A stretch of 64,000 bases of DNA from Lama guanicoe (lineage: Eukaryota), in the NCBI GenBank assembly GCA_013239625.1, contig MU055549.1, forward strand, positions 496,001 to 560,000, read 5' to 3'. Numbering within the stretch: the stretch's first letter is position 1; the number at the start of each line of letters is the position of its first letter. The notes beneath the pieces were generated by a model. That model was given only the letters and a program-made list of their open reading frames with translations, was not told the origin of the DNA and did no database searches. The translations under genes were made by a program, and so were the position numbers. Of the stretch, positions 4,577-22,900 are shown piece after piece.

Positions 4577-4943
4577 GTCCACCTGGAGGAGACTGTGCAC
4601 CTGGAGGGGATGGTCCACCTGGAGGTGACTGTCCACCTGGAGGGGATGGTCCACCTGGAGGTGACTGTCCACCTGGAGGGGATGGTCCATCTGGAGGAGA
4701 CGGTCCACCTGGAGGGGATGGTCCACCTGGAGGAGATGGTCCACCTGGAGGAGACGGTCCACCTGGAGGTGACTGTCCACCTGGAGGGGATGGTCCACCT
4801 GGAGGGATGGTCCACCTGGAGGGGATGGTCCACCTGGAGGGACAGTCCACCTGGAGGAGACTGTGCACCTGGAGGGGATGGTCCACCTGGAGGGGAACGT
4901 GCACCTGGAGGGAACTGTGCACCTGGGGGAGACAGTCCAGCTG
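4577..4943. repeat. Minisatellite/VNTR, 20 copies of an 18-bp unit (GTCCACCTGGAGGGGATG and variants) in an ADGRA1 intron
   Basis: Units counted directly: 18 of 18 bp and 2 of 17 bp, plus a trailing GTCCAGCTG. Confidence 0.95.
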
Positions 4944-5888
4944 TGGGAATATCCACTGGGCTGAGCCAAGTAAGCGGCTGGCAAGAGGCTGGAGAGAGGA
5001 GAGCCTGGGTCCCTCGGTGTCCAGCTGCAAAGGTGCGTCGGGCTGCCTGTCCTAGACTGGCAGCTGACAGAAGGGCCTCTTCTGAGCTCCATCAGGACCG
5101 AAGGGCAGTTCATACTCCCCCTCTTTTTAAAGAAAGTTCAGGCGAGGCTGAGGGGTGGGAAGAAGACCTTTCGTGGCTTGTCCTCTCCATGCCCGGAGCC
5201 AGAGCTCCCTTTTCACGCGAGTGGGAGCAGACCTCCCCAGAGCGAGCTCCGCCGCGGGCCGTGTGGGGCGGGCGCACGTGGCTGTCTGTGGCCTGGGGCC
5301 CCGTGACCTGCCAGTGACCGAGCCCCCTCCCTGACTGGGAGCTGCACTTCCGCGGGGTCTCTCCTTCTTAACCGGAGTAGAGCTGCTTTACGGCGTTGGG
5401 CCAGCGATTCAGTCACACACACACAGACTCCTTCCCGTTCTAAGTCGTCAAGGCTGCTGACTACAGCTCCCTGCGCTGTCCACGCGCACCCGTGGGTTCT
5501 TACCTGGACCGAGGGGGCAGGGGGCCCCGTCCCACGCTTCTGCCCCACAGCCTCAGCGGGAGAGGCGGGTCGTGTCCCTAGCTCTGGGTTGAGCTCCGTT
5601 TGTTGGGCAAGGAATGTCTAGTTAACATGTCACCTTACGCCTTGGAGAAAGCTGGTCCAGTTGAAAAATAAATCAAATGACATGATCGAACGCTGGGCCA
5701 AGCTGCAGACTCACACGGGGAGAAACTGCGATGCAGACCCTGGATGCGTAAACGCCCCTTCACGAGAAACACCTGAGCAACACTCAGCTGTCATCCCGCT
5801 AGCAGGGCACTTGCCACGCGCCTCCCCTTCGGTGGGAGAGCTGACGGCCCTGCAGGTCTGCAGGGAAATGAGGGCAGGCAGCACTCAC

Positions 5889-6012
5889 CGCCTGGCACAC
5901 GGTGGGGTGCTTGGTGCGGTTGATGCCGCCGGCGAACACTGAGAAGGTCAGAGCCGCGTGGAAGCAGAAGTTCAGGAGCGCGTGCCGGCCTTTCCGGCTG
6001 ATCCGGATAGCG
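5889..6012 (-). CDS. ADGRA1: ADGRA1 coding exon, ICL1-TM2-ECL1 ([42 protein letters not shown])
   Basis: 124 bp exon with acceptor ccccgcag|C and donor GCG|gtgagt. Phase 2 in and phase 0 out, consistent with both neighbouring exons. Confidence 0.96.
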
Positions 6013-6264
6013 CTGCGGGGACGGAGAGTTCGCGTCAGGACCTGGCATCTCGGGGCGCAGTGCAGGCGGGAGCCCGCTCGCCCGAGAGCCACGTCCCGTC
6101 GGTGGGGGAAGGGGCTGAGGAGCTCAGAGCCTGGCTGAGACGGGGCCGAGAGCGACACTCCGGAAAGACCAGACTGTGGGAAGGACAGACCCTGCTGGAT
6201 CCCCCTTGGTCGGTGGCCGTGGGGTGGCTTGGTGTTAAGTCCCCTGGGGAATCTGGAGCACCTG

Positions 6265-6330
6265 CCCGTGGGACAGGTGAGGACACTGAGGCCCTGAGAC
6301 CTTGGGACTTGTCCAAGGTCACAGACAGAG
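6265..6330. mobile_element. MIR SINE core fragment
   Basis: acaggtgaggacactgaggc...gacttgtccaaggtcaca resembles the MIR core. Confidence 0.6.
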
Positions 6331-7062
6331 AGGGGAGAGAGGAAAGCCACCAGCCACGCCTCCTGGTTCCTGGGACAGAGCTCTCTCCGCTCTGAGTGGA
6401 CATCTGACACCTGGTGGCTCGGACGCACTGGAACACCCCCCCACAGCCCAGCCTCTCCCTGGACTAGGATGTGCCTGTGGCGTGTCCATGTCCACGACCA
6501 CCCCGGACCCAGTGATAGCCAGACAGACTGCTTAGCCTCTGCCTGCTGCTGTCATCGCTACCCCAGCTCCTCTGTGGCCTCAGTCGCACCCAAGCCTCCT
6601 CCCCGACCCCAGCTGTGGACATGACTCTTATTGTGGACTTCACGCTGCTGGGGGCCAGCATCCCGCCTCACATTTCTCAGTGAATCTTCATGTGATGCCC
6701 TCTCCCCAGGCAGAGGTGGCCCGGGAACCAGCTCAGCAGGAAACCAGCTGGACTCTCCTCTGGACAAAGCAGAGGCAGAGCTGCCCGAAGGGCTCTGCCG
6801 GCTGCTCCAACTGCCCAGAGTGGGGCGGCCAGGGTGCCTGGCCAGTGGAGGGGGTGGACTGCAGCTGACTGACGAGAACGGGGAGGCTGGCGTGGAGGGC
6901 GTGGCTGTCCCTGAACCTTTGGCCACCCTCGGCCACTGCCAGGCTCGCGCCGGCCTGCCACCTGTGACATCCCTCCTGGGCACTTCTTGCTACGCGAGGG
7001 CAGGGGTCTCCCAGAGGGTCTGCACTGGAAGGCGGGCGTGCGTCCAGGGCAGGGCGCCTCAC

Positions 7063-7190
7063 CTGCGGTGAAGGACGTAGGTGGCGGCGGAGGCCAGCAG
7101 GCAGAGCAGCATGACGGCGGTGCAGGCGTACACCACGGGGTGCAGGAACTCCCCGGGGGCCTGGGGCAGGGAGAGGACGGCCCTCAGATC
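7063..7190 (-). CDS. ADGRA1: ADGRA1 coding exon, short N-terminus and TM1 ([43 protein letters not shown])
   Basis: 128 bp exon with acceptor tcctctccag|GAT and donor CGCAG|gtgagg. The LHPVVY motif is typical of the ADGRA family. 40 of 42 codons end in G/C. Confidence 0.96.
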
Positions 7191-7639
7191 CTGGAGAGGA
7201 CACAGAGCAGAGCGTGACCCACGTGGCCGGGTGCCTGGGCAGACCCACTGGGCTCTCCCTCGGCCCTGGGCTCTCCCTGCGTTGGTGGGAGGATTCTCGG
7301 ATCAGGTGGGGACTTGCTGGGTCTCAGCAGAGGCGGACAGTCTGTCTGGGCAGGGGAGGACGAACACTGCCCCGGTGGGTCTGCTTCGCTGCGAACGTCT
7401 TTGTGGGCTCTGACGGCAGCTCCCGAAGGACAGTGTTTCCGCTGTGCCCGGCAGCTGGCCTCTGGCCTCTGGCCTCCTTCCCACCCAGTGCCGCTGATGG
7501 AGCCTCGGGGCACCTGCGTCTGTCAGAGGCGCTCGCTCAGCTGAGGGCACGGCTGCCCCGGAGGCCTGGATGCGGCTGCAGAGGCAGCAGCTCACATCAG
7601 ACCACCCCAGGCCCCAGGTCTGAGCCTCACACCCACCGA

Positions 7640-7905
7640 CGCTCTGCTTTTAGGGACATGGCTCAGGTGGACGAGGTCACAGGACCAGCGTCCCTGTAAG
7701 AATAGGGACAGTGGGAGCTCAAACACGGAGGAAGGGCCGCGGGCCCACATGGTGGGAAGGAGCTGTCTGCACACCAAGGAACAAGACCTCAGGAGAAAGC
7801 GGCCTGCGTGCAGCTGTGCCTTGCACGTCCAGCTCCAGGACCGCAAGAAAGAAATTCCTGTGGTTTAAGCCACCTGCCGTGTGAGACTTTGTTACTGTCA
7901 CCCTT
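7640..7905 (+). mobile_element. MaLR (MLT1-type) solo LTR fragment
   Basis: ccagctccaggaccgcaagaaagaaattcctgtggtttaagccacc...gtgagactttgttac resembles the MLT1 3' end. Confidence 0.7.
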
Positions 7906-10900
7906 GGGGACAAATGCTCCCCACTGGGTGGGTGGTCTGGCTCTCGGTGCTCAGGCCAGAGGGTGAAGTCCTTGCTTGACCCCCAGCCCAGGCCCTGAAC
8001 CCCCCACTTTGCCCCCATGGCCCCTGGGGGATGTGCCTGGCTCTGGGAGGACAGGCTGGGGGCCGTGCCCACTGGTGAGGGCTGCCAGAACCCCGGTGAG
8101 GCCCCAGAGCTGCCCCCATGTTGACCATGGGGCGGGTGGTCAGGGCGGGGCCTGCCTCTGCACTGGCCCCGTCCCCAGGCCACGGCGGTGTCCAGTGCTG
8201 ACATGCCCACCCCGGGCCAAGGGCGGCTCCAGACGCACAAGCCCCAGGCAGTAGGCACAGCTGGTGGAGCCTCCAGACCGGGAATGGGGGATGGAGAGAT
8301 GGCCGGAGAGGCTGTGGCCCGTCCACGGCAGGAGGCAGAAAGCAAGCCTGTCTGAGCCCTCAAGCTGCTTTTCTCCTGAGGGACACCTGTCATTAGCCCA
8401 GCTGAGATGACACCTTGCCAGCCAGCAGGTGCGGGATGTGCTCAGAGGGAGCCGCCCACTACCCAGTGGGGCCTCGGCCCCGACTCGGCCCCGACGCAGG
8501 GACTTTGATGAGGACGGCTCTCTGTTGTCCTGGCAACGGCTGATGGAGTCCCATCACCTGGGAAAGGCCCTGAGTGACGTGGACGCCTGGGGGCTCCTCA
8601 GCGTCTGGCTGTGCAGGGGCCCGGCTGACACGCGAAGCAGGAACAGTGTCCAGTCCCAGAGTGAGCCGACGGCCAGGGAGGCGCTGGACAGCCACTCCAC
8701 AGACCTCACCACGGCCGCCCTTGTGCTTGGGGCCCGACTGCCCACGGGCTAGGAAGTCTGACTGGCAGGTGTGGACGTGCACAGACCATCAGTGATGCCC
8801 ACCCGGACACACGGGCTGTCAGTAGGACACATGCTGCTCACAGCCCAGATCCCAGGAAACCACGAGCTCAGGAGGAAAGGCAGCCTCAAGGTGACGGGGA
8901 TGCAGAGTGTCCCCAAGGGAGACCTGGAGGTTCTGCTGGCTCCAGCCGCCTGGGGAGGCATGGCCCTGGGGCAACGGGCCTGGCACGGCTTGCAAGGACG
9001 GTTTTTCCCAGCCTCACACAATGCCTGGTGGAGCCACTGCCTAGGGCGTGAAGGCCACGGGGCCCGGTCCCGCAAGCAGGAGCCTTCGCCTGGGGAGGGG
9101 GGCCCCCATGACGGGCAGAATGGCCCAGTGGAGAACAGGCATTTTGTAAGAAAGAGTGTGCAGGGCCGGAAACACAGGCTGCCCCTCATTTCTCAGGGAC
9201 GTTCAGCTCCCACTGGCGTCAGGGACACCGGGGCGTCCTGACCCCGGCACATTGCCATCAGGGTGGCAGGAAGGGGACCCGCGGCTGAGAGTCCCAGGGC
9301 ACTTTTGCACCCGTCAGGTCGAGGGCACCAGCCTCCTGTCAGATGCAACTCAAGGCGAACATCGCGGACACCGGGTCTCCTTGGTCAAGCCCTGACCGCA
9401 AGTGGCCTTTTCGCCTGTGGTTCGTCTGAGAGCCGTCGGCTGGGAGCAAGCGGGCCCAGGTCCCACAGGCGGCCACGTGTCCTGGGCCTGTGCCCGCTCT
9501 TTTCATGGAGACGATGGTTTGTTCCTCCCGTAACATCAGCTGGGTCTGAGACCCCCTGACTCTTCACAAAAGCCCACCTTGGCTTCCGGTTTCACGTCTG
9601 CACGCGAGAGCCGCTCCAGGACCGGCCGGTGCCCCGTCCTCTCACCGACCCTATCAGGACCATGTCCTCGGTGCCCCGAGGTGAAGGGCCCAGGTGTGTC
9701 CACCTTCTCGGGGTGTCGTCATTGTGGTGTGAACACTGGGGAGCTACCTCGCTGCCCCTAAAGACCGAGGTCAGACCCCTGACTCTTGTCTGGGGTGGGG
9801 GTAGGGGCAGCGGGCGGAGAGGGGTCGAGGAAAGCTAGCCCGCGCTTCCCAAGCAGCATCCCCGCAGGGACTGGACGGCCGGGGTCCCTGTGTCCGGGAG
9901 CCATCAGCACATCTGGCCCTGGGAGGGGTGTCCAGCAGCCGGACCGTGGTGGCGGGCTCACCTCCAGACGCGTCCTATCTGCCACTTCATTCACACGCAC
10001 AGACCCTCTGTCTTAAGCCAAACAAGGGTCAGAGCTGGTTTTCCTGCAGCAGGAACGCACCCTGGAGCTTCAGTGCAGGACCAGTGTTCGCACAGCCCGA
10101 GGTCTCCCCACCTCCGGGGCTCCTGCCTTCCGGTCGAGGCCCCGGTTTTGGGGCCTCACCCAGGTGAAGGGGTCCCTGGCCCCGAGTGACTGCATCCACC
10201 ATGTATGTTTTAGAAGAAACAGATTCAATTCCATTTAGCCTCCTGGTTTTTTTTTCTTTCTCTAAATTAGAGTTATCAACAGTGCTTTCTACATTTTTAG
10301 AGGTGACATTTAAAATTCAAAGTAGGTAATGCAAAACGGAGATACGTTTTATATTTTAAAGTTCACACATGTACAAGTTCCTCTTGGAAGAATCCACCCT
10401 GCAGGTGTTCCGTGGGCAAAGTCCCTGTAATGGTCCAGCACATGGTCAAACAGCATTGAGCTGACTGCCTTCTCTGGACACGACCTTCGGGGGCTGCGGG
10501 GCCGTCAGGGCTCCTGGGACCAGTGACAGGGACGGAGTGTGCAGAGGGGTCCACAGAACCCACAGACAAGCTGGGGGCGAAGGCCACCGCCAGCCTCCTT
10601 GGCGGATGGCCGCACGCCAGCTGCCGGAGCCGCAGTCCTGCCCCCGGCTGTGGGGCTGGAGCCCACGGGTCCCGTCACTTCTGCGCCCGCAGGATGGCCG
10701 GCGGGGCTGCTGTCTCCTCTGAGAAGCCCTGGCCCCGCTGTCCGTGGAGCCTGCAGGCGGGAGCGACCCACCCAGGGCAGCAGCCCCCAGGCTGGTCTGT
10801 TCCCATTTCCCCTTTTCTGTCACGTGTTATTACGATTTTCCCCAGATGTGTCCTTGCTGGTAGGCACTGCAAATCAGCTAAACCAGGATGTCAAGAAAGC

Positions 10901-13900
10901 CGAGAAGGAGGGAGGGGAGAGGTCCACTCCGGGGTCGCTCATCCGGTCAGACAAGCTCGCGTGGCCTCTTGCAGGCCGAGGTGCGGACCATCTGCGGGCG
11001 TCCCTCCCGCGCAGCGAGGCGTCCGTGCTGGGTCTGCGGGCGGCCGGGGCGGGCAGGGCTGTCCTTCCTCCCAGTCTCGTCCCAACCAGACTGACCTCGG
11101 GGGAGCCTGCAGTCCCTTGTGTGCTGTTTAATGTGGTTCCAACCTCTCGATCTGTCAACCTTCCGGGACAGTGTCCCGGGGGGAGCAGATGCAAAAGGTA
11201 AGTAATTTACTCATTTGGAGCACAAGTTACCCTAACTGGACATTTCCGTGGCTTGTTGCTGTCTTCTGAGGATGTGTGGGCCGGCTGAAGTCTGAAGAAC
11301 TTTGGAGAAAAATACATTGAGAAATATCACGGGGGTTTCCTTCCAGACGGGAGGTCACTTGCTTAAAACTGTCAACACAGACAGAGAGGAGCCATCGGGT
11401 GGGCGATAAACTCTGCGAGAGGAAGGTAGGTTTTAGAGGTTTATAGAAATTGAAATATTGGACTGAATAAAGAGCAACAAACCGGAGGAACTCCCTGAGC
11501 CTCTGAACTGGTGTCGCGGGCGGATGCGGGCGGTGGGAGCAGCAGGTTTGGCTGGGGTCCCGCTGGCTCAGACAGAGCCCCGACGCCCTGCGGGCTCCCT
11601 CCCTCCCAGACCACCCACAGCCCCGGCCTCCAGTCTCTGCCCTGCAACCTCCCTGGTCTCTCCGGGGTTTCAACTCCACTCTTGCCTTTTGAACGTGGGT
11701 GCTTCCGTGCAGAGCAGCGGCGTCCTGAGCGTGCATGTCTGTCTTTGGGGCAGGCCTGGCCTCGCGCCCTGTCCTGGTTCCGGGCCCTGCAGGACCTGGC
11801 GAAGGATGCCCTGACACACCGAGGTCAGGCCATGCCTCCTGGGCCTGGGCCACACGGAGCAAAGCCACCAGCGAGGCCATGGTGCCACTGAGGCCCCAGC
11901 ATGAGTGAGCGGGTGGGCTCACCCTCTTTCCCGAGACAGGTGTGGCAGCACCACCGACTCAGGGAAACAGCACACGGGTTTGGACGGGTTTCCCTCCGAC
12001 TCCAGAGCCTGCCACTTTGTTCCCTTGAAGAGCACTGTGCCCTGAGCTGACAGTGAGGATCACAGAAGACTATGGGGCGCAAAGCCGCTTGCATTTTGGA
12101 ACCTGCTTGAACTTGACAGCTGGCAGCACCATCGCGGGAACAGCCGTGCAGGTCAGCCCCTGACAGCAGCTGTGGTCAGTGCTGGGCGGGTGGGCGGGGG
12201 TGTGAGGCCTGGGATCTAAGGGGTGTGAGGCCTGGGCTCTGCCTGCTGGAGATGGGGCTGCAGCCCCCCAGCCCCCCGGGGCGGCGCCGGGAACTCACCA
12301 TCCTGCGGGCGCCGAGGGCACGCAGGCGGCGTGTTCAGAAGGTGCGTGGGGCACCAGCAGTCCCACAGGAAATCGCCCAGAGAGCAGCGTGGTTTCAGCT
12401 TTGGTCGTACCTGCTGGCGACCACGGCGTCTTTACAACTGGGGGCCGGAGGCGCCTTGTCCGACCACAGGGGTTGGGGCAGCTCACCACCAGGGCCAAGC
12501 GGGTGGTGGGAGTGTGGCAAGGCCAGAGCCAGCCCTGCTGGTTCTCCTCCCCTCGTGCCCCAGGGCCACGGGCAGCCGCCCAGGTGTCTACACCTCAGAC
12601 TCTCAGACGCGCTCAGGAAAGTGCTTGCAGCCGAGCTGCAGCCCACATGCCAGGCTGGGCATTCTCTGTCCTTCCGGAAAGCCTCTCCAGCGTAAGTGTT
12701 ACTTGTCAGGAATAAAAGCTCAGCGCACAGCTGAGATTCCAAACTCTCCGGGCGAGGGTAGCCCAGCTGATTCCCGCAGTCTTGACGGGCCTGCGTGGAG
12801 TGGGCTGGGGGCCGGGGTGGGGAGAGGGTGGGACGGACTCGAGGAGGAGGGCCCCCAACCGGGGCCGCCCGGCGGTTCTCATGGGAGGGCCAAAGGGTCA
12901 GACAGGAGGTGGAGACGGGGCTGATGCTGGGGAGGACAGCGCACATGCGCAGGGCCCGAGGGGCCGTGCTGGCCCCCTGCCCTGACCTCTGGCTCACCCT
13001 TCATCTGCCAGTGACAAGGACCCATTTTGCAAACGAGGATCCAAATGTGAGGATACAGAACCTCGGACACGGCTGCCCCAGAGGCCTGGACGTGCTGGGG
13101 GCAACAGGTGGCTGGCTCGGGTCACCGAGCTGGAGGTGCAGCTGGGCTGTGCCTGGAACGTGACCCTCAGGCCTCTGAGAGGCTGGCGCCGGCCCCCAGC
13201 CTGCGGGCCGGGGGGCAGCTCTGCGGGCAGCGCTGACCTCTGGCTAAAAGCTTCTCCCTTGTTTTGACATTTCAAATTGAACAAGAAGATGCACCGGTGA
13301 CTCAGAACCCCTCCTTGTGGGGAGTCGCATCTGCCCCAGCGACTCGCCGTCGTTGTCCGAGCCTCGGCCACCTTGGCCTCCCTGTCCTCCGGCCATCGGC
13401 ATTCCCCGCACGCGCTGGCCGCTGTCCCTCACACACACACGCATACACACAATGCATTATTTACAGGCGTCAGCCTTTCCGGAATCCAAGCGGGGGGGCA
13501 GCACAGGAAGTGCCCCTGCCTTCAGGACGAGCCCCCCCCGCTGCTCATGGTGGCCGCACCCCCTTCTCTGGAGAGAGACCCGACCTCCAAGCTCGGCGTC
13601 CCTGCAGCGGAAGCCCACCCACATCCCCTGCCATCAGTTCAGCCAACTTTTTGGGGGAAGGGGCCGGCAGGGCTGCGGTGGGCAGCCGCGTGTGGAGCCT
13701 AGGGGCCGGAGTGGGAGGCGCCCAGCCCGGGGCCGGAGGAAGCTTTCACAGGTCACAGCCTGGGGTGGGGGCAGGACGCCGTCTCCCGTGAAGCCAGTGA
13801 GTCAACGCTGCAGCCTGCCGGCACCTCATTAGTATGGTCTGTGAGCAGCCAGCAGAAGGTCCACTGGGCGAGGGCAGCCTGGAGCCCCAGCCCCTGCCCG

Positions 13901-13972
13901 CAGCCTGGCACGGGGCAGTTCCTGCTCCTGCCCGGGGCCCGTGCGGGGGTGGGCGGCCCCGCACGTACTCAC

Positions 13973-13975
13973 CAT
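13973..13975 (-). CDS. ADGRA1: ADGRA1 start codon (last 3 nt of exon 2)
   Basis: CTC ATG|gtgagt spliced to the 7190 acceptor gives M-DL..., matching the known MDL N-terminus of mammalian ADGRA1. Confidence 0.9.
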
Positions 13976-14165
13976 GAGCACAGAGAAGTCACTGAGGTGT
14001 GAGCAGGGGGTGGAGGTGGCGCCGCCCGCCCGGCCGATTATGTTGCACCCTTCTCCCCTCCAGCTTCCATGGCCGTCTGGAAGGTCAAGGTCCCGAACAG
14101 CGGCCACGGGGACGAGCCCCTGGCGACCGCGGTGGGGCGGGCAAGGGTGGAGAGGCCTCCCCCAT
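13976..14165 (-). pseudogene. ADGRA1: ADGRA1 exon 2 5'UTR portion, a vestigial GAIN/GPS-coding exon
   Basis: Acceptor cctgaccctgccctgtcttcgcag|AT. In frame with the ATG it reads GLVPVAAVRDLDLPDGHGSWRGEGCNIIGRAGGATSTPCSHLSDFSVLM, collinear with the GPS region of ADGRA2/ADGRA3 as recalled. Confidence 0.88.
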
Positions 14166-14830
14166 CTGCGAAGACAGGGCAGGGTCAGGTGGGGGGTCCC
14201 CCTCCGCAGGGGACCCCCAGCATGGCCGGCAGCACCTCCCAAAGTTGGCCCCCACCTTGGCTCCTCTCCACCAGCCAGCCTGTTGGAGTGTCTGTCTCGG
14301 GCCCGTCTGGGCAGGAGAGGTTCCGGGCCAACCTGGGCCTCAGGGCCTCGGAGGGACCTGGCCCACAGCCACACGCTGCGCGGGGACCCTTCCTTCCCCG
14401 TGTTTGAAACCCCACCTCTGCTCACCATCCCAGCACAAGACACTCAACCCAGTCTTGGGCTGCAAGAAACACGCACGGCCTGCCTGTCAGTTTAAATCAA
14501 GGGAGTCAACAGAGCTTGAATTAATCTCCCAGGGAACAGCCAGCCCGGGCGGACGGAAGCCTCTGCTGCCTGGACGTGGCTGGACCTCAGGGGCTGTGTC
14601 CCCCCACAGACTGAGTCCTTTGGCGGCTCCGGGCCATCAGTGGAACCCAAAGTTATCCAGAATCTGCACTCGGAACAGCAGGAATCGCCTCCCTGGCTTG
14701 GCGCCCAGGAAGCGGCCAGGGAGTGGACACCACGGCCAGTGGGCTCCGAGCTTGCCTCCCCGGGCCCTGTCGCTGCCTCACTGGGGCCCACCTGCCACAA
14801 ACCCCGGAGACGCACAGCCCAACTTCTCAC

Positions 14831-15050
14831 CTATTTTGGTGAAAACAGCTGGAGTGGCCACGGTCCTGTGCCTCCCGTTGGCGGCGAGCCGCGGTGAGTT
14901 CTCGGGTCTGGGGAGCAGTTTTCCATCCCAGAGGCAGCGCTCTGGAGCCTGCAAGTGGAGTTATCAACAGATTGCAGGACCGCAGCCCAGCGCCGGCCGG
15001 GGCTCTGCACCCCGGAGGATGAGTCAGAGCCAGGAGCAGCCGACATTCAG
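14831..15050 (-). pseudogene. ADGRA1: ADGRA1 exon 1 (5'UTR; 5' end uncertain), a vestigial GAIN exon with a frameshift
   Basis: Donor ATAG|gtgaga at 14831/14830. Reads VLQSVDNSTCRLQSAA /frameshift/ WDGKLLPRPENSPRLAANGRHRTVATPAVFTKI-G, like the recalled ADGRA3 segment DDSLYKLQLIAFRNGKLFPATGNSTNLADDGKRRTVVTPVILTKID. Confidence 0.82.
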
Positions 15051-15310
15051 TGCAATTCTCAGCAGGCAGCTTCCCGAACTCTGCGTGAGGACTGCCAGCG
15101 GCCGCTGCGCCTGCTCCCGCGGGCGGCGACGGTCAGGGACGAGGGATGGTCGGAAGCAGGAGCCGTAACCATGGGGATGGGGGAGGCGCTGATGGCGCGG
15201 CGCGGTGGCCGGCTCCCTGCGGCAGGGCCGGAATGGTTCGTCCCAGCCAGCCCGCTGCCAGCCTGCCGCCCGTCACAATGCAGAGACGATTTAAAGAGAC
15301 AACCGAAGGT
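15050..15310 (-). promoter_or_regulatory. CpG-dense putative ADGRA1 promoter/TSS region
   Basis: Dense CpG cluster directly upstream of exon 1, with an X-box-like GTAACCATGGGGAT (15165-15178) and a TTTAAA box near 15290. The TSS cannot be placed from sequence alone. Confidence 0.55.
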
Positions 15311-18300
15311 TTTGCCTTTGCTTCCAGCAGAGTCGGGCACCTCACATTAAAGCACGTCCCCGAGAGGACGCAGGAGGAGGCCTGGTGTTTTTGTTTCACT
15401 CTCAGAGGAAATCCCGTCCATCTAGGGCTCCGACAACAGACACACGAACAAGGAAATTGATTCTGGAGACGTTTTCACAGTCCTCGTATTAAAATGTTCT
15501 CAAATCCAAATACGGCCACACCGAGGTGAACACACGGGTCGGTGCCAGCGTGAGTCAGCAGGGTCCTCCTGCCAGTGTGGACGGCCTCAGCCATGCAGAA
15601 AGAGCCCCCGCAGACCCCTGCCCGGTTCAGGGTCCCAGCCCCCAGCCTGGGTGGCAGAGACCAGTGACAGGGCGTCAAGAAGAGGCAGCAGGTGGAGGGA
15701 AGGGCCCACAGTGGGGGGGGGGAGGGGGCCAAGGCCCAGCCAGCGGGACCTCTTGGTGGGGCATTCCCAGCCCTCCTGTCCCTCATCCCACCCAGTATTC
15801 CTGACGCTCCATGTCCCTGACCCTCCTGACTTTCCCGTTGCCCTTCTGTGGGCTGCTGTGATGGGTCCTGAACTTCTGACGAGGGACACGAAACCCCAAG
15901 GGGTGAAGTGACTTTCCAGTTGCCCAGAGACTGGGCATCAAGGCTGGGTGGAGACCCTCCCGCCCCAAGCCCGGCCCCGGAGTCCTGGCACTGCTCCCTC
16001 AGGGGCTGGAGGGCTCATGGAGCTCCCTGGGGACCCAGTGGGTGGTCCTGGGCAAGTGGGGTTTGGGGCAGTTGGGAAGGCCCACCCTGACCTGGGGGGC
16101 ATTCTGCTCAGACTCCCCCAGGCTGGGTGGTCCCCACGGACCCGTGCCCACCTACAGGTCCCTTCGCAGACTCCAGGGCAGGGGCACAGGTGAGCACAGG
16201 GCAGCCCCTTGCTGCCGGCAGGGGCTCCCAGCCCGGAGATGACAGAAAGACGGGCGTGAGCTGCCTGGCACGGGGCCCTGTACCGCAGCAGCAGCAGGGC
16301 ACGGAGGAGAGGCCGTGCCGGGGGCTGTCCCTCTGCCCTGTGCACAGTCTCCTGTCTGACCCTGCGCCCTCTCCCCTAGAGGCTGTGACCTGCCCTGGCC
16401 TCAGAGCAGGTGGGGGCCGGGACCAGTGGTGGCTTCTGGGAGAACTTGCAGGAGGTGTGTGCGGGTGCAGAGAGACAGGGAGGGGTGGCCTGGAGGAGCA
16501 CCCCCCGCCCAGGCCCCAGTGCTGCCCTGTGGGCCCGGGGCTGCGGCCCACAGGCCCCAAAGGCTCACCAAGACCAGACTCACCAGGGGTCCAGGGGGAT
16601 GCATGGGGGGCCTTGAGGGTTTTGGGGCCCTGGGGTCTGAGTGGGGTACACAGAGGGCCTGTGTGCTTCGGGGGTCCCCCAGAGGGGACTTCAGGCAGAC
16701 AGGCCTGTCTGACTACCACCATCCTGACCTTGCATTTGGGGGCCTGGACCTGGGGGCAGCTGGCCCCCTGGATCCCAGTGTTAGTTTGGGTAGGGGGGCG
16801 TCTCTCGGGAAGGGAAACTGGGCCTCGGGCTTTGTGAGTGGTCGGGGTGCCCAGCCCTCCTCACAGCTGCCCCGCCAGCCCCTCCTTGGGCTTGGACGAC
16901 CCGCCCCCAGGCCTCTGAGCTGCCTGCGGAGGGGATGTGGGCCCAGCGGTCCTCACGCTGCCCCACAGTGTCGAGCTCTGTACTCAGCACAGGGCTGCGC
17001 CTGCGAGGTGGGGAGACTGAGGCCGCAGCTGTCAGCTGCTTCACCGGCCCCCGTGTTAGCGGCAGAGCCAGGCTGGGGAGAGCGGCCACCGAGGCCGCCC
17101 TGGGCCTTCAGAGGCTGGCGCTGCTGGGAGCCTCAGGCCTTCTGCCTCCTGCGGTGACAGCCGCAGCTCAGAGGGCCCACAGGGACCCCTGTGGACCGGG
17201 TTGCGTCCTGGGTGTCGTGGACACTGCACCCTCCCTTTGTTGCTGGGCCTCAGGTGGCTGTGGCCAGGTGTGCCCCTGGCTGCCTTCTGCCTCGAGCCCC
17301 GTGTGGAAATAGCATCGTGGGCCCCGAGCTGTCGTCCATCAGCAAATGGAGCCTCTGCTTTCTGGAATCTGCAGCTGACCACGGGAGACAGCTTCAGTGC
17401 ACCTCTCGCCCTTTACAATCTACTGGCACACTGAAGACTCACCTTCTGAACAAGGTATTCGTGAAGCACAGGCCTCCCACTGGCACCGAGAACTCACTCC
17501 TGAAACGTGTTTGGCTTGACTTATTTCACAGCCGTAAGACAAGTGTCTAGCAGACTGCGGCTCCCGGTCCCTCGCTGCGCTGAGTCTCCACCTACCTCCT
17601 GAAGAGGCTAGTTTCTGGCACATGCAGAGCTCAGGACTCGCGGCCACAGAGGTCTTCCCAGCGCAGGCGGGGCTTGGCCATCAGGGCAGCAGCCCTGACC
17701 TCCTCTCTGCAGCCCCCAGCACTTTATGCGGCTTCCCTCTGATGGAAAGTCACTTCTGAGGCAGAGGTGACCGGCAGCTTCTGCTGGGGTGTTGGGGGTT
17801 GTGTGTGGCCGGGACAGCCGCTCAGGGGCAGCCTGGGGCTTGCAGCATGGGCCCACCTTGTCCCAACAGGAACCTCGGGCAGAGAGCCAGCTGCTGCCCC
17901 ACCCAGGCTGGAGGCTGGAGGTCCTGGTCCCCAGGCCCAGGACACGTGTGTGGAGACGAGCCAGTTTCTCTCTGCGCCTTTAGACCTCGGGAACCTGCAG
18001 GCTGCTCGTGTGAAGACTGGAATGGCCAGGGGACGATGCTGGGATCAAGGGTCGGATGGTGGATGGGGGGTCAGCTCAGGGAGATGCGGGCACTCCTTCC
18101 TTTCCCTGGACGCATGTCTGGCCCCACCTCCCCGTGCAGGAGCTCACTGAAGACGCAGCAGTGGCGGTGGGAACAGCCTCCGGCGGGCTGCTGGGTCTCA
18201 AGCTGGACTCGCCCCCTCTATGGACACTTTAGGGATCCTCGGGGCAGCTCACTTTCCGGCCGTTTCCTGGGGAGTCTGACAGCCTGAGGTGGGAGCTGTC

Positions 18301-18426
18301 TGTGCCGGATGGAGGTGGCGCCTCCAGGCTGTGTGCAGCTCGGCCCGAGAGGCTGGACACCCAGTACCCGACCCATCGTGTACTTAGCATCCGCGGCTCA
18401 TGGAGCAGAATTAAAGCTGCTCTCCT

Positions 18427-18440
18427 GTTGCCGTGGCAAC
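18427..18440. promoter_or_regulatory. RFX X-box GTTGCCGTGGCAAC
   Basis: Near-perfect palindromic X-box about 3 kb upstream of exon 1, in a relatively AT-rich patch. Confidence 0.55.
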
Positions 18441-19917
18441 CAGCCCTCCCCCCACAGCAGCATCAGTCTGAATTTGTGCAGAATGTTTCTAACAAAGATT
18501 TACACCAACAATTCACTCTGCCCTGAGGGTGGCACAGAGTCTGAGAACCAGACAGGCCGATGAACAAACTTATCATTTTCTCAATGGTGCCTTTCCTCCG
18601 TGAAGGCTCTCGGAGCCCCCAGGCTACCCCCGGTGCAACTGCCCACTGACCACTGTGACCAACGGGCAGCCTCAGGTTCTTGAGGGCCCCTCACTAACAA
18701 TGGGGTGCCTCCTCTGAGAAACATCTCAGCTGGGGGTCGGGGCACAGGGCCCTCTCTTGGCCGAGCCTGAGCAGGCCCTCCTTGGGTTCCGCAAGTTGCG
18801 GGGTCGGGCTGGGTATGGCATGGGGTGGCTCCCAGGCAGGTGAGCATGGTGCCCCGTCCCTCATCTCTCAGAGCCCCGTGCCTCCCCTGCCTCCAGGAGC
18901 TCTCAGTCCTGGACCCCTGACGTCCTGGGTGAGCCCATCAGTGGGACGCCTTGGTGACCCCGGCTCTCTGCAGTACATGAGGGGTGTGGGGTGTGGGAGC
19001 AAACACTGAGAACGCGGCCCACCGCCATTCTCTAAAGGACCAATGTCCCGTGGTGTGCCCCACAGGCAGGGCCTGCCCTTGGCACCCAGCGCGGGTGTCG
19101 CCGAGTGGAGACTCGCAGCCTCAGCCCTGGCCAGTCGGAGGATGTGTCTGAGCTTCCCTCGGAGACCAGTGACCCTGAGCTGTAAACCAGCTTCTGCCCA
19201 CTGTCACCTCTGAGGGCCCTGGGCTGCACACCCTCACGGGCAGACCTGCACACGCATGACCACCTGGTGGGGTCCCACTGACCAAGGGCCTCCTGTGGCA
19301 CCGGGTGGGGAGGACGTGCCAGCCACGGGCTCGGGCTCCGACGCGTCCCACACTCTGCCGTGGGAGCCCTCATGTGCAGCGGAGGCTTAACAGGGGCTGA
19401 TCACGTGTGCTGGTCATGCCCCACCCAGGCGTCCACTGAGAGGGACGGTGGAGCCACAGCCCTGACGCTGGCTCTGAGGGGACCAGGGGACCACAGGGAG
19501 TTCCCTCACTTCCAGGACACATCCTCTTCTGGACTCAGAGTTAATCTGGGGACGTCTGTGGACGTGTCACTGGCGTCTCCTGCTTCCACTGTCCTTCGTC
19601 AAAGCACCTCTTCCTGTCCACCTGGAGTCAGGAAAGAAGCAGGGACTTCCAGTGGTCAGGTGGTTTCAGACTTGAGGGAAGTCCAGTTTGCAGACCGGAA
19701 TCATTATGCAAAGTTGCTGTTTCATGGAAACATCCAGCCTCCTGGGACTGGAGCCGGCGTCTTGGGGGTCCCGCCAGGAGTGCAGGGTCTTGGGGAAATC
19801 CCTTCTGTGAGGGCCTTTGTCTGCTGTCCCTGCTCTGTCCGTGCGGGGACGCCACCCCCTGCTGCCTCCACCCCCGGGGCAGTGGACGCAGCGGGAAGAG
19901 GAGACAACCAGCTGGCC

Positions 19918-19938
19918 TGAGCTGTCCTTGGTGCTGCC
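19918..19938 (-). promoter_or_regulatory. Candidate REST/NRSF RE1 site (GGCAGCACCAAGGACAGCTCA)
   Basis: Both RE1 half-sites (CAGCACC and GGACAG) are present with the canonical 2-bp spacer, about 4.7 kb upstream of a neuronal gene. Confidence 0.55.
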
Positions 19939-22900
19939 GGACAGCCCTGGGCCTGGAGGCAGCGCTGGCCAGGGCCTGACCCCGCCACCCTGCCCACCGG
20001 CAGGACGAGCCCTCCTTCCTGTGTAAGCTCCTGCTCCACCGCCAGACCCGGCCCTGCCCGCCAAGGCCCTGCCTGGTCAGCCCATCCCAGCAGCCTGGCT
20101 CAGACTGGCTTCCCCGCCCCCAGTCTCCTCCTGGCTGCCTCCCGCCTGGGGCTGGCCAACGCTTCTGACGTTCTAGCCAAAGCAATTTTACCAAATTAGG
20201 TGTGGTCAAAAGCAAGTTGCCCCACCTGGAAAATCTGTTAAAATAATGATTTGTTTGAAAATTCATGTCCCAAGTCACTGGTTTTCCTAGTTTCAGCCCT
20301 TTCAGCTCCCCGCAGGACAGGCTGCCACTTTACATCTTGAAACATTTCTCTCTCTCCTTTCGAAATATCCCTAAGCCTAGAAGTAATATGAATTTCAATT
20401 TCTGATCATTTCCTGCAAGTCCTTCTTGCTTGGAGCCGTTGGAATGGCAGAGGTTGGGAGCAATCTAAGCGCCTGACACCGGGGTGGGTCGGAGGAACAG
20501 ACGCCTGCCGGTGGTAGCTGGTCAGCAGCTCTCAGCAAGGAGGCGTGCAGGCCGCCGTTCATGGACGGTGGGCGTGACGGCGTGGAAGAGCTCGCGGTGC
20601 GTGCGGGTGCGTCGGAACAACTGAGCGCCGAGGGGCGCCCCTGGTGCCACGGCCGGGCCGGAGCTGAGTCTGGTCACCTTATTCTGCGTCCGTATTTTAG
20701 ACGTTATGTTACTGACCACGTATTGTTTTTGTAAAGACAAAGCTCAATAAAATCAGTTTAAACAATAAAAAATACGAAATTTTGATAGTTGTGATATTTA
20801 GGTTTTTTCAACTAACTCCTTAGTTTACAGTTATTGGATTTGCTGCCCACAATTTGCTCACATTACAAAGCAGGGCAAGACAAGTAAAATTAGTTACAGG
20901 TCAAAAAGTTCAAGAAATAAGGAAAAAACAAATACTATGATAAAAAAAACAAAAGTAGAGAAACCCTTGAATTTTGAAAAAAAAGATTACAACTTGTGAA
21001 CACAAAGTTTTTCAAAATCCCCACGTCACTCAAACAGGCATCCAGCAAAAGCAGTGAACAGACGCTCCTGCAGGGCAGGCCTGCTGGGGGGCTCGGGGAC
21101 GCGGTGACCAGCCTGGCCCCGCCCGGGGCCACGCGGGCGGTGAGAGGCGCCTGCGAGAGGCGTGGGGCCGGTGGCGGGTGGGGCACGCAGACCCAGCACA
21201 CGCGGGCGGGCCACGCTCCCCGCTCGGCCGGCACCCCCCACCCCCCGTCAACGGCAGGACATCACTGTGGCGCTGGCCTCGCCTGCACTTTGGCCCCCCG
21301 CCACCAGGCAGGCTCGTCCATCCCAGGAGTCTACGAGAGCTAAGATCCTCGTTCATTTCAAAACACAGTTCACAGACTCCAAGTACTTGGCCAGTACGTC
21401 CACACGCGCCACAGAGCGGCAGGCGAGGGGAGACCGAGGAGAGTGTGGGCGAGTGGGAGCGGATGGAGGCTCTGGGAAGCACACGCACTCCTCGGAGCGC
21501 AAGACTGGGGGTGGACTCCGCTCTGCCCGGCAGCCCTCGGGGCCTCGGCCGCCAGCAGCACCACCGTCCTGCCTGCCCAGCTCGTCACCCACCGGAGGCT
21601 CGTCACCAGCCAGGGAAGGAGACCCCGTGCCTCCCCATCCAGCGCCTGCCCTGAAGCCTCGTTCCTCCACCCCAGCGGGCACTCACACTCCGTCCGCCGG
21701 ACTGAGGTCTCGCCCAGCCCCAGTGTCCGCCCCACCCCTCGTGGGGCATAACTCCCTTGGCACCATTTCCCTCCTCCCGCTCCCCGTGCTCCAGCCCCCA
21801 TCCCACTGCCCATCAGCCCCGGGCCCCCGGGGCCTCCCGAGGGCTCCCACCTCCTCCCCCAGCCCAGCCACCTCAGAGCTGTGGGGGACAGGGCTGGGGG
21901 CAGAGGTTCCTGGCCCCGAGGGCAGCCCCTGTGGGCATCGCTGGTGACTAGGAAGCTGCCGTCAGCCTGCTCTGTCCATCTCGTCCAGGTGGGCAGAAGT
22001 TGTCCACACGGCAGGCTCCGGCCAGGGCGATCTTTCACCCCTGCACCATGCAGGAGCCCCACTGCGGGATGCCAGACGTGGGGGTCGTGGAGGGGAAGAA
22101 AGGCGGAGTGTCCTCCCACGGGCTCGGCCCCCACTCAGCCCAGCTCCCTGAGGTTGTGGGGCGCCAGTTGTGGAGACAGCATGGCAGGGAGGGGGCTTGG
22201 CCTAGGGACACCGAGGGAGGGCCAGGCCCGGGGCCCCAGCAGAGGGGAATGAGCCTCCCCAAACCTGACCACACGCCACCCAGTGCCTCCAGTTAGAGAT
22301 TCGGGGACACACTTGTCAAGGACAGACGGGCCGACCATGGAGAATGAGCCTCTCTCCCTGCTCAGCACCCCCCGGGAGCCCCGCCCAGGCCCACGGACCC
22401 AGGACCCCTGGGCTCACCCGGGCGTGCGGGCGCAGCTCTGCAGAAAGATTCTGTTTCCCACGCTGGGCCCCTGCACCGTGCACCGCCATCCTCAGTCACT
22501 TCTGCACCACTGATAAAGCCAGCCCTCCTAATCTCCAGTTTAATAAAAGGTTGCCGATTAAGCACTTTTTTCCAAAAGTGGCTTGGACTCAGTCGGATCC
22601 ACCAAGTCGAGACTTCACGTTGACTTTCAAACCCTCCTGCCAACATCGGTCTTTCCCTTTCAATCCTGGAAAATCCTGCCTTTCCCGAGAAAGTGCACCT
22701 TGGAGTCGCCAAGGAGGTGGCGAGAGGCAGTCTCTGCCCCTGAAGCGTTCCAGGGAAGAGGAGGGCAAAGGATGGAGTTCTTTTTAGCCCCGATGAGCTG
22801 GTGATGCGGGCGTGGCCATCACGAGACGGGGGGGGGGTCCAGGCTTCCTGAACTGTGACACGCTTGACGCAGAACCCAGAGGCCTCGAGACGGACTGTGC

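What the first reader, a model, noticed from the sequence alone, without database searches (positions are those of the whole stretch)
13973..14125. Fossil GPS motif with an H-L/S cleavage consensus, in frame, in the 5'UTR of the GAIN-less receptor ADGRA1
Seen: the exon that supplies only the ATG reads, in the receptor frame and without stops, GLVPVAAVRDLDLPDGHGSWRGEGCNIIGRAGGATSTPCSHLSDFSVLM, then splices to DL...LHPVVY (TM1). Established: GPS motifs end in W-x3-GC...C-x-H-L/(S,T)-x-F-x-V-L-M; ADGRA3 as recalled has VAARWDFDLLNGQGGWKSDGCHILYSDENITTIQCYSLSNYAVLM-DL; mammalian ADGRA1 is described as lacking GAIN/GPS. Inference: the GAIN C-terminus was not deleted but demoted to UTR. Translation was reset to the Met of the Stachel-type SDFSVLM, so the receptor is made directly as a C-terminal-fragment-like protein without its tethered-agonist core. 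The first GPS Trp is now Arg (CGG), which indicates decay.
Basis: partly seen in the sequence, partly recalled or inferred. Interest (0 to 1): 0.92.

Follow-up and report, generated by a model that had tools for sequence, protein, structure and literature searches.

The report
Fossil GAIN exon in ADGRA1 leader
The exon that gives this camelid's ADGRA1 receptor its start codon is a decayed leftover of the last exon of the extracellular GAIN/GPS domain that platypus, marsupials, birds, frogs and fish still have, which shows how the one "GAIN-less" adhesion receptor lost that domain.

Summary
Pfam scores it 26.9 bits against a cut-off of 22.5, and a profile of 34 long ADGRA1 ectodomains gives E 8e-15. 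The window is camelid ADGRA1: three of its exons are 100% identical to the alpaca model, which starts M-DLRAV.

The exon is the orthologue of the last ectodomain exon of long ADGRA1, with both splice sites kept. The exon upstream (at least 15164-14831) is a second fossil, as the scan's note s1-859687 also proposed. One frameshift in each exon and a 15-nt deletion break the old frame. Nothing of the LRR, Ig, HRM or GAIN-A parts is detectable in the 49 kb upstream.

Contigs from a close relative show the two exons spliced together. No in-frame AUG precedes the terminal ATG, which is the seventh (P7') residue of the old tethered agonist.

Three corrections:
- The H-L-S triad is a camelid-specific change from H-F-S, not an ancestral cleavage site.
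- The splice from 13973 to 7190 rests on annotation and orthology only. One contig joins 13973 to another exon at 11412.
- Short models from the same Met exist outside placentals.

No paper describing the relic was found. It is a neat but not revolutionary piece of gene archaeology.

The parts
13973..14165 (-). Exon 2 of the ADGRA1 leader. It is the orthologue of the last ectodomain (GAIN subdomain B / GPS) exon of long ADGRA1, and only its last codon is now coding.
   Evidence: AG acceptor and GTGAGT donor. Spliced to exon 1 in contigs of a close relative. The boundaries match the ..KI|DG.. and ..AVLM|DLK.. junctions of long orthologues.
13973..14122 (-). GPS-homologous segment in the receptor frame (QGLVPVAAVRDLDL...CSHLSDFSVLM).
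   Evidence: Pfam GPS 26.9 bits. tblastn with platypus E 1e-12. Profile HMM E 8e-15, positions 536-585 of 585.
13973..13975 (-). ATG: the Met at position P7' of the ancestral tethered agonist, now the initiation codon of the short receptor.
   Evidence: The alpaca model P0115 starts M+DLRAV and is 100% identical to the window exons. No in-frame AUG lies upstream. The Met aligns with AVLM of the long forms.
13991..13999 (-). His-Leu-Ser codons, which look like a cleavage triad.
   Evidence: Orthologues read H-F-G, H-F-S, H-H-N or H-W-G, and the whale fossil reads H-F-S, so the Leu is derived.
14093..14095 (-). CGG (Arg) where the first GPS Trp stood.
   Evidence: Whale, P0011 and cat copies still have Trp here but have lost the second Trp.
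14123..14165 (-). 5' part of exon 2. The old frame (D-G-G-G-L-S-T-L-A-R-P-T-A-V-A-R-G) enters from exon 1, carries a 15-nt deletion, and is shifted by one base against the GPS frame near 14117-14122.
   Evidence: Reading against DGCSFGNLTSPLTIGLRHFARGVDP of P0003. There is a net 16-nt deficit relative to platypus. The position of the shift is inferred.
14166..14830 (-). Intron between the two fossil exons (665 nt, GT..AG).
   Evidence: A joint skipping 665 nt in a 507-nt contig of run X6, supported by loose ends in X2 and X8.
14831..15164 (-). Exon 1 of the leader. Its 3' 160 nt (14992-14832) are the fossil of the penultimate ectodomain exon, read in two frames (VLQSVDNSTCRLQ; DGKLLPRPENSPRLAANGRHRTVATPAVFTKI). 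The 5' end is not mapped.
   Evidence: tblastn E 2.7e-8. Profile HMM E 3.5e-8 and 0.02, positions 462-522. Contigs reach 15143 and 15164. Frames.
7063..7190 (-). TM1 exon ([26 protein letters not shown]...), the ancestral and annotated splice partner of 13973.
   Evidence: 100% identical to P0115. The junction itself is inferred and was not seen in reads.
11384..11412 (-). Start of an alternative exon that follows donor 13973 in one contig of a relative. Read from the exon-2 ATG it ends in a stop.
   Evidence: Loose end located (1 mismatch, 0 expected by chance). AG acceptor and sequence.
14800..15600 (.). CpG-richer patch over exon 1 and the 450 nt upstream of it; a candidate promoter of the short transcript.
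   Evidence: CpG observed/expected is 0.72-0.80 here against 0.05-0.46 further upstream. The promoter role is an inference only.

Best explanation
Exon 14165-13973 (minus strand) is the surviving copy of the last ectodomain exon of an ancestral long ADGRA1 (LRR-Ig-HRM-GAIN-7TM). That exon encoded the end of GAIN subdomain B: the GPS motif and the tethered-agonist strand. Platypus, koala, birds, lizards, frogs and fish still have the long form, whereas placental models have only the 7TM part.

In this camelid the exon and the one before it (at least 15164-14831) are no longer protein-coding. One frameshift in each, plus a 15-nt deletion, break the old frame. Key GPS residues have decayed. No upstream domain exon is detectable in the window.

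Both exons are still transcribed and spliced as the 5' leader of the short mRNA. The only codon of the old frame still translated is its last one, ATG. This is the P7' Met of the ancestral Stachel. It is the first in-frame AUG and is spliced to the TM1 exon.

The receptor is therefore made like a C-terminal fragment that lacks P1'-P6' of the tethered agonist. The GPS-like letters, including H-L-S, do nothing now. The exon works as a leader exon that carries the start codon, a donor site and several upstream AUGs.

Shown here: the homology, the frame breaks, the exon 1-exon 2 splice, and the absence of an upstream in-frame AUG. Inferred: use of the 13973-7190 junction, the position of the promoter, and when the ectodomain was lost.
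For: - Homology: Pfam GPS above its cut-off. The best matches among 1.84 billion proteins are ADGRA1 GAIN C-termini. A profile of 34 long orthologues hits only 14122-13973 (8e-15), 14927-14814 (3.5e-8) and 14992-14942 (0.02), collinear with profile positions 462-585. tblastn agrees.
- Gene identity: P0115, the alpaca ADGRA1 model, is 100% identical to exons 7190-7065, 6017-5886 and about 1290-1143, and starts M-DLRAV.
- Distribution: placental models are 515-577 aa with 7tm_2 only. Platypus, koala, bird, frog, lizard and fish models have Ig, HRM and GAIN-region (PF26588/PF16489) matches. All but koala also reach the Pfam GPS model.
- Decay: the frames differ between exon 1 and the GPS segment. 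Different lineages lost different key residues: Trp1 in alpaca, Trp2 in whale, P0011 and cats, and the C-x-H region in cats. Pfam GPS scores are 35-40 bits for living forms, 26.9 for alpaca, 15.9 for P0011, and none for whale or cat.
- Transcription: contigs of a close relative join 15143..14831 to 14165..13972 across a GT..AG intron.
- Start codon: after a stop at about 15135 there is no in-frame AUG before 13975.
- Rate: exon 2 differs from the relative at the intron rate (5/193 against 10/358, p = 1; 3 non-synonymous and 2 synonymous changes in the GPS frame).
- Literature: ADGRA1 is described as the only aGPCR without a GAIN domain (PMC13178472, bioRxiv 10.1101/2022.07.14.500097), while 84 ADGRA1 homologues in 47 species have one (PMC11697300).
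Against: - No read or contig here shows 13973 joined to 7190. The one contig that runs past the donor joins 11412 instead.
- No RNA of the window's own species was obtained: run X23 gave nothing.
- The 5' end of the transcript is not mapped.
Neutrality therefore rests on five substitutions and on protein-level comparison.
- Fossil copies were seen only in Laurasiatheria (camelid, whale, cats). The tenrec comparison was not significant, and rodent models start MTQW-DLK, which is unexplained.
- Long-form exons might lie beyond the window's 49 kb of upstream sequence.
Confidence: 0.85

Rival explanations
1. The two fossil exons survive not as neutral debris but because they were exapted as a regulatory 5' leader, with upstream AUGs/uORFs, promoter-proximal elements and the alternative non-productive exon at 11412 tuning how much receptor is made. 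This supplements the best explanation and does not exclude it.
For: Four upstream AUGs precede the main AUG, one of them in a strong context (GCCATGG at 14070). The main AUG sits in a weak context. Exon 1 is nearly invariant between the window and its relative (0/313 and 1/334) while introns differ at 10/358 (p = 0.012). An alternative exon after the same donor gives a stop.
Against: Exon 2, which holds the GPS relic, changes at the intron rate. The counts are small and come from one species pair. In cats the 15046 AUG is in frame with the receptor, so the uORF layout is not conserved. No expression or translation data were obtained.
Confidence: 0.3
2. The short form was not created in placentals. 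An internal promoter already produced a Stachel-less receptor from this same Met in earlier vertebrates, and placentals merely lost the long form.
For: Models starting MDLK/MDFK at the same Met exist for a marsupial (P0121), a bird (P0131, isoform X2), a salamander (P0140) and a lungfish (P0157), alongside long forms in related species. Teleosts have a widespread short model with its own first exon, MFTEEWDSLDWE-DLKK.
Against: These are automatic gene models. A 5'-incomplete transcript, or giant introns in lungfish and salamander, would yield exactly this protein, because the GPS exon holds no other Met. No transcript evidence was examined.
Confidence: 0.35
3. The GPS segment is still translated, either as part of a long GAIN-bearing isoform or as an N-terminal extension of the short receptor, as annotated for cats (692-699 aa).
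For: The frame is open through exon 2 and 100 codons of exon 1. Felid RefSeq-type models include it as coding sequence.
Against: The frame has no AUG in this species, and an open frame is expected by chance at 68% G+C (p = 0.29). The frame read in exon 1 is not the ancestral one. The frameshifted reading is shared with whale and cats, so it is not an assembly error. No upstream domain exons and no signal peptide were found. The alpaca model starts at the terminal Met. A GPS strand without the rest of the GAIN fold cannot cleave itself (established knowledge of GAIN domains).
Confidence: 0.04
4. The resemblance to a GPS motif is a chance product of a G+C-rich open frame.
For: Long open frames are common here.
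Against: E-values are 1e-12 to 8e-15 against orthologues. The segment is collinear with a second fossil exon. Exon boundaries are identical to those of long ADGRA1, and the exon sits directly upstream of the TM1 exon.
Confidence: 0.01

Closest known systems
Long-form ADGRA1 of non-placental vertebrates (platypus P0054, koala P0052, birds P0067, Anolis P0063, frogs P0049, fish P0082)
   Same: Same gene. The exon junctions ..KI|DG.. and ..AVLM|DLK.. are the same. Identity over the GPS exon is 50-54%, and the TM1 exon follows directly.
   Different: There the exon is coding and sits inside an ectodomain with Ig, HRM and GAIN-region matches, plus LRRs in bird and frog. Here the frame is broken, Trp1 is lost, the upstream exons are undetectable, and only the last codon is translated.
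ADGRA2 (GPR124) and ADGRA3 (GPR125), the paralogues
   Same: Same subfamily. The literature describes LRR, Ig, HRM and GPS/GAIN domains for both (PMC2386866, PMC2571103, PMC13178472).
   Different: They keep their ectodomains in mammals. I did not fetch their sequences, so the recalled ADGRA3 string is untested.
N-terminally truncated or CTF-only isoforms of other adhesion GPCRs, made from internal promoters (transcript surveys such as PMC11039983)
   Same: The receptor starts after the cleavage site, from a transcript that begins inside the former ectodomain-coding region.
   Different: In placental ADGRA1 this is the only form. The start lies inside the Stachel (P7'), so the agonist core is absent, and the leader exons are decayed coding exons.
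Laboratory CTF-deltaTA constructs of adhesion GPCRs (bioRxiv 10.1101/2022.07.14.500097)
   Same: Those constructs begin right after P7'. Natural placental ADGRA1 begins at P7'.
   Different: ADGRA1 is a natural, fixed state. Removing the remaining short N-terminus does not change basal G-protein activation in mouse ADGRA1 (PMC13178472).

Membership tests
GPS motif (Pfam PF01825) | Profile score at or above the curated gathering score | tested here: met
   26.9 bits against 22.5, E 6.8e-6, profile positions 10-45 of 45.
GPS motif (Pfam PF01825) | Both conserved Trp and the Cys residues of the ADGRA1-type motif present | tested here: not met
   Trp1 is Arg (CGG, 14093-14095). Trp2, the G-C Cys and the C-x-H Cys are kept.
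GPS motif (Pfam PF01825) | His-Leu-Ser/Thr at the cleavage position | tested here: met
   The letters H-L-S are at 13991-13999. The Leu is derived: orthologues and other placental fossils have Phe, His, Trp or Tyr there, and +1 is Gly in platypus, koala, Anolis and frogs.
Functional GAIN domain | GPS lies in one reading frame with complete subdomains A and B | tested here: not met
   There are frameshifts in both fossil exons. Profile positions 1-461 have no match in the window.
Functional GAIN domain | The segment is translated | tested here: not met
   No in-frame AUG lies between the stop near 15135 and 13975. The alpaca model starts at the terminal Met. No ribosome or peptide data were available.
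Fossil (UTR-ised) coding exon of a live gene | Orthologous and collinear with a coding exon of outgroups, with the same boundaries | tested here: met
Fossil (UTR-ised) coding exon of a live gene | Still transcribed and spliced | tested here: met
   The exon 1-exon 2 joint is seen in contigs of a close relative, and donor 13973 is used (to 11412). This was not shown in the window's own species.
Fossil (UTR-ised) coding exon of a live gene | Evolves without protein-level constraint (dN/dS near 1, frame-breaking indels, lineage-specific loss of key residues) | tested here: inconclusive
   Frame breaks and lineage-specific losses are seen. The rate equals the intron rate, but on only five changes. 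DNA of other mammals was unavailable.
ADGRA1 (gene identity) | Coding exons match an annotated ADGRA1 | tested here: met
   100% identity to P0115 (Vicugna pacos ADGRA1) over three exons.
CTF-only isoform from an internal promoter | Transcription starts inside the former ectodomain-coding region | tested here: inconclusive
   Contigs extend to 15164, about 120 nt beyond the inferred ancestral acceptor near 15040. A CpG-richer patch spans 14800-15600. No 5'-end data were available.

The most novel reading that the evidence does not exclude
Placental ADGRA1 is an ancient Stachel-less short isoform that became fixed. An internal promoter and the P7' Met start already existed before the ectodomain was lost. 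Placentals then lost the long form, and the last two GAIN exons persist because they are the leader of that short mRNA and now act in translational control. This would make ADGRA1 a natural experiment on what an adhesion GPCR does once its tethered agonist is removed for good.
Probability: 0.3. Interest if true: 0.6.

Novelty: new member of a known kind. Interest (0 to 1): 0.45.

Why it matters
ADGRA1 is cited throughout the adhesion-GPCR field as the only member without a GAIN domain and tethered agonist. The papers I could read say only that it 'likely lost' these features.

The relic shows concretely how that happened. The last two ectodomain exons were kept as the mRNA leader, and the initiator Met is residue P7' of the old agonist. 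The natural protein is therefore equivalent to the agonist-deleted constructs used in the laboratory.

This dates the loss to after the marsupial split. It explains why some gene models, such as those for cats, carry spurious N-terminal extensions. It also suggests a direct test: ask whether the placental 7TM still responds to the P1'-P7' sequence that monotreme or bird ADGRA1 keeps.

The finding is of moderate interest. It changes no mechanism of receptor signalling, and the existence of long orthologues was already known.

Tried and rejected
I could not fetch DNA of whale, horse, rodent, armadillo or marsupial loci, so there is no dN/dS, no indel-phase statistics and no check of the rodent MTQW start.
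- The search for homologous proteins with the 64-aa exon gave no candidates. That search sees only proteins of 35-112 aa, so the blank means little.
- Run X23, RNA of the window's species, laid nothing. It is probably not brain tissue.
- The read laying limit of 6,000 letters could not span 13973-7190, so that junction stayed untested.
- Tenrec model against exon 2 in three frames: the best frame was reached by 21 of 500 shuffles, which is not significant.
- tblastn and a profile HMM found no LRR, Ig, HRM or GAIN-A remnant at 15200-64000. All other hits were low-complexity Pro/Gly/Arg matches.
- Rfam found nothing at 5000-20000.
- Lagerstrom et al. 2007 (PubMed 17212699), the one paper most likely to mention a remnant, is not held.
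Exons were translated and searched one at a time.
- Rejected readings: chance ORF; assembly-error frameshifts (the shifted reading is shared with whale and cats); H-L-S as an ancestral cleavage site.

Full report
**What is in the sequence.**
On the minus strand, an exon runs from 14165 to 13973. An AG precedes it and GTGAGT follows it. The next coding exon starts at 7190 with [21 protein letters not shown], the first transmembrane helix. An open frame of 64 codons is not remarkable at this base composition, with an expected probability of 0.29. The case therefore rests on homology.

**Is it a GPS motif?**
- Pfam's GPS model matches residues 29-63 at E 6.8e-6 and 26.9 bits, above the curated 22.5.
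- Against PDB sequences the best match is the GPS of ADGRE5, at E 2.2e-5.
- Against 1.84 billion representative proteins, the best hit is a gray-whale ORF holding the same exon (69% identity, E 2e-18). Next come C-terminal GAIN fragments of bird, frog and fish ADGRA1 at about 4e-9.
- tblastn with platypus ADGRA1 gives 54% identity over 50 residues, E 1e-12.
- A profile built from the ectodomains of 34 long ADGRA1 orthologues gives E 8e-15 for 14122-13973, covering profile positions 536-585 of 585.

**Which gene and species.**
The alpaca ADGRA1 model P0115 (567 aa) is 100% identical to window exons 7190-7065, 6017-5886 and about 1290-1143. It begins [19 protein letters not shown]. The window is therefore a camelid ADGRA1 locus. 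The remaining 3' exons lie beyond position 1.

**Who has the long form.**
A search with a felid ADGRA1 model returned 436 relatives.
- Placental models are 515-577 aa and carry only the 7tm_2 domain. Nearly all start MDLK.., while murid-type rodents start MTQWDLK...
- Platypus (1142 aa), koala (1147 aa), birds, Anolis, frogs and fish have models with Ig, HRM and GAIN-region matches, plus LRRs in bird and frog models. All but koala also reach the Pfam GPS model.
- In all of them the ectodomain ends ..NFAVLM and joins DLK/DFK...EFLHPVVY.

The window's exon is thus the orthologue of the last ectodomain exon. The donor directly after ATG and the acceptor in ..KI|DG.. are at the same positions as in birds and fish.

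**A second fossil, and the breaks.**
The companion note of this scan (s1-859687) proposed that the upstream exon is also a GAIN relic. It is.
- 14927-14832 reads DGKLLPRPENSPRLAANGRHRTVATPAVFTKI, against NGKLFPSTGNSSNLADHGRRRTVTTPAVFAKI in platypus.
- 14980-14942 reads VLQSVDNSTCRLQ, against VWQSVDNSSCRLQ in platypus. The HSP set scores E 2.7e-8 by tblastn. The profile gives 3.5e-8 and 0.02.
- These two pieces are in different frames. The 14 nt between them replace 15 nt in the ancestor.
- The old frame enters exon 2 as D-G-G-G-L-S-T-L-A-R-P-T-A-V-A-R-G, against DGCSFGNLTSPLTIGLRHFARG in a bird. It lacks five codons and then slips by one base near 14117-14122 into the GPS frame. The exact position is my reading.
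- Whale and cat copies give the same shifted reading, WGRPLHPHPPH and WGQPRDPHPPH. The break is therefore old and not an assembly error.

**What is missing.**
The profile and tblastn find nothing for profile positions 1-461 (LRR, Ig, HRM, GAIN subdomain A) anywhere in 15200-64000. Whether those exons were deleted, lie further upstream or decayed earlier cannot be decided from this window.

**Decay pattern.**
In the alignment:
- the alpaca copy has lost the first Trp (Arg, CGG) but keeps the second Trp, the G-C Cys and C-S-H;
- the whale copy and a related unnamed ORF (P0011) keep the first Trp but have lost the second;
- cats have lost the second Trp and scrambled the C-x-H region.

Pfam GPS scores fall from 35-40 bits in living long forms to 26.9 (alpaca), 15.9 (P0011) and nothing (whale, cat). 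Different lineages losing different key residues is what relaxed constraint after a common loss predicts.

Between the window and a close relative (coded organism A), exon 2 differs at 5 of 193 positions. Intron pieces differ at 10 of 358 (p = 1). In the GPS frame, three of the five changes are non-synonymous and two are synonymous. This is consistent with neutrality, but the numbers are small.

**The H-L-S triad.**
The letters are there (13991-13999). The same position reads:
- H-F-G in frogs, Anolis and platypus;
- H-W-G in koala;
- H-F-S in birds;
- H-H-N in most fish;
- H-F-S in the whale and P0011 fossils.

The Leu is therefore a late Phe-to-Leu change in the camelid line, inside sequence that was already untranslated. 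It is not evidence that ADGRA1 once cleaved itself. With Gly at +1, most long forms lack the nucleophile.

**Is it really leader sequence?**
Contigs from three studies of organism A lie on the two exons and not on most of the intron.
- One 507-nt contig joins 15143..14831 to 14165..13972, skipping 665 nt with GT..AG ends.
- Two other contigs carry matching loose ends.

The exons are therefore transcribed and spliced together in a close relative. Nothing was recovered from the one usable RNA run of the window's own species.

In the receptor frame, exon 1 has a stop near 15135 and then no ATG. Exon 2 has none until its last codon. That ATG is thus the first in-frame AUG. Four other AUGs in other frames precede it, at 15046, 14926, 14165 and 14070, the last in a strong context. 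In cats, indels put the 15046 AUG in frame, which explains the 692-699 aa felid models with a 133-aa extension.

Contigs reach 15164, about 120 nt beyond where the ancestral acceptor should lie. A CpG-richer patch spans 14800-15600. This fits a transcription start in the former intron, but no 5'-end data exist.

**The junction to TM1.**
I could not span 13973-7190 within the 6,000-letter limit.

The one contig that continues past the donor joins 29 letters that map to 11412-11384, right after an AG acceptor. This is an alternative exon. Read from the exon-2 ATG, it ends in a stop whichever donor it uses, so that isoform cannot encode the receptor from this AUG.

The other contigs stop exactly at 13972/13973, as assemblies do at a branch point. 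The 13973-7190 junction is supported indirectly:
- the alpaca model needs an exon ending in ATG joined to 7190;
- cat models contain ..AGLM|DLKTVLS;
- the junction is the ancestral AVLM|DLK junction.

I rate it likely but not shown.

**Mechanism.**
The tethered agonist of adhesion GPCRs is taken as residues P1'-P7' after the cleavage site (bioRxiv 10.1101/2022.07.14.500097). In long ADGRA1 these are [G/S]-N-F-A-V-L-M. Placental ADGRA1 starts at that Met, so it lacks P1'-P6' and keeps only the linker to TM1. It is a natural equivalent of the agonist-deleted C-terminal fragment. Deleting the remaining 22 N-terminal residues of mouse ADGRA1 does not change basal G-protein activation (PMC13178472), which agrees with this view.

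**Is the 'reset' new?**
Models beginning at the same Met are annotated in a marsupial, a bird, a salamander and a lungfish. Teleosts have a widespread short model with its own first exon. These may reflect a real old internal promoter or merely incomplete models. I give the old-isoform reading about one chance in three.

**Known or new.**
The papers I could read state that ADGRA1 lacks the GAIN domain or 'likely lost' its N-terminal features (PMC13178472, PMC2386866, PMC2571103, PMC13604961). One notes that 84 ADGRA1 homologues in 47 species do have a GAIN domain (PMC11697300). None describes remnants in the mammalian leader. Lagerstrom et al. 2007 is not held, so I cannot rule out an earlier mention.

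Coding exons surviving as untranslated exons, and truncated receptor isoforms from internal promoters, are known kinds of event. This is a new, instructive example of them.

**Limits.**
- Fossil copies were seen only in Laurasiatheria.
- The tenrec comparison was not significant.

Noticed in passing
window 11231-11412 (minus strand): An alternative exon lies after donor 13973. Its acceptor at 11412 is shown by one contig of a relative. A possible donor GG|GTAACT at 11231 would make it 182 nt. Inclusion puts a stop in the frame of the exon-2 ATG, so it looks like a non-productive or regulatory isoform.
   Followed up: partly
window 14831-15164: Exon 1 is almost invariant between the window and its close relative (0/313 and 1/334 differences). 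Exon 2 and the introns differ by 2.6-2.8% (p = 0.012 against introns). This hints at constraint on the first leader exon or its promoter.
   Followed up: partly
window 4577-4943: An 18-nt minisatellite (20.5 copies, 84% matches) lies in the intron between the exons at 6017-5886 and about 1290-1143. It gives long Pro/Gly-rich ORFs on both strands that pollute protein searches.
   Followed up: no
P0099 (Ambystoma mexicanum ADGRA1 isoform X2) and P0140 (Pleurodeles waltl): The axolotl model's GPS region looks decayed (Trp1 to Leu, G-C Cys to Arg, no Pfam GPS hit). The newt model starts at the same Met as placentals. This may be an independent loss of the GAIN domain in salamanders.
   Followed up: no
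P0132-P0134, P0139, P0141, P0147-P0149 (frog, bird, eel, sturgeon models): These isoforms join the LRR-Ig-HRM and early GAIN part straight to DLK..TM1, skipping the exons that encode the GPS. They would be a GPS-less long form in non-mammals.
   Followed up: no
P0055 and P0060 (murid and jerboa ADGRA1 models): Myomorph rodents start MTQW-DLK or ..EW-DLK instead of M-DLK, so their first coding exon ends differently. Whether it derives from the fossil exon could not be checked. The mouse protein used in functional work has this start.
   Followed up: no
P0052 (koala ADGRA1 isoform X3): The koala long model has no Pfam GPS hit at E up to 1 although it keeps both Trp and both Cys. Its site reads H-W-G. 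This may be relaxed constraint already in marsupials, or just divergence.
   Followed up: no
P0126 (Tenrec ecaudatus model) against window 14123-14165: The tenrec N-terminal extension reads SSLARPVPLSLRRSAWGLSP. This resembles the ancestral frame of the 5' part of exon 2 and seems to keep the five codons that the alpaca lacks. The match was not significant on shuffling (21 of 500).
   Followed up: partly
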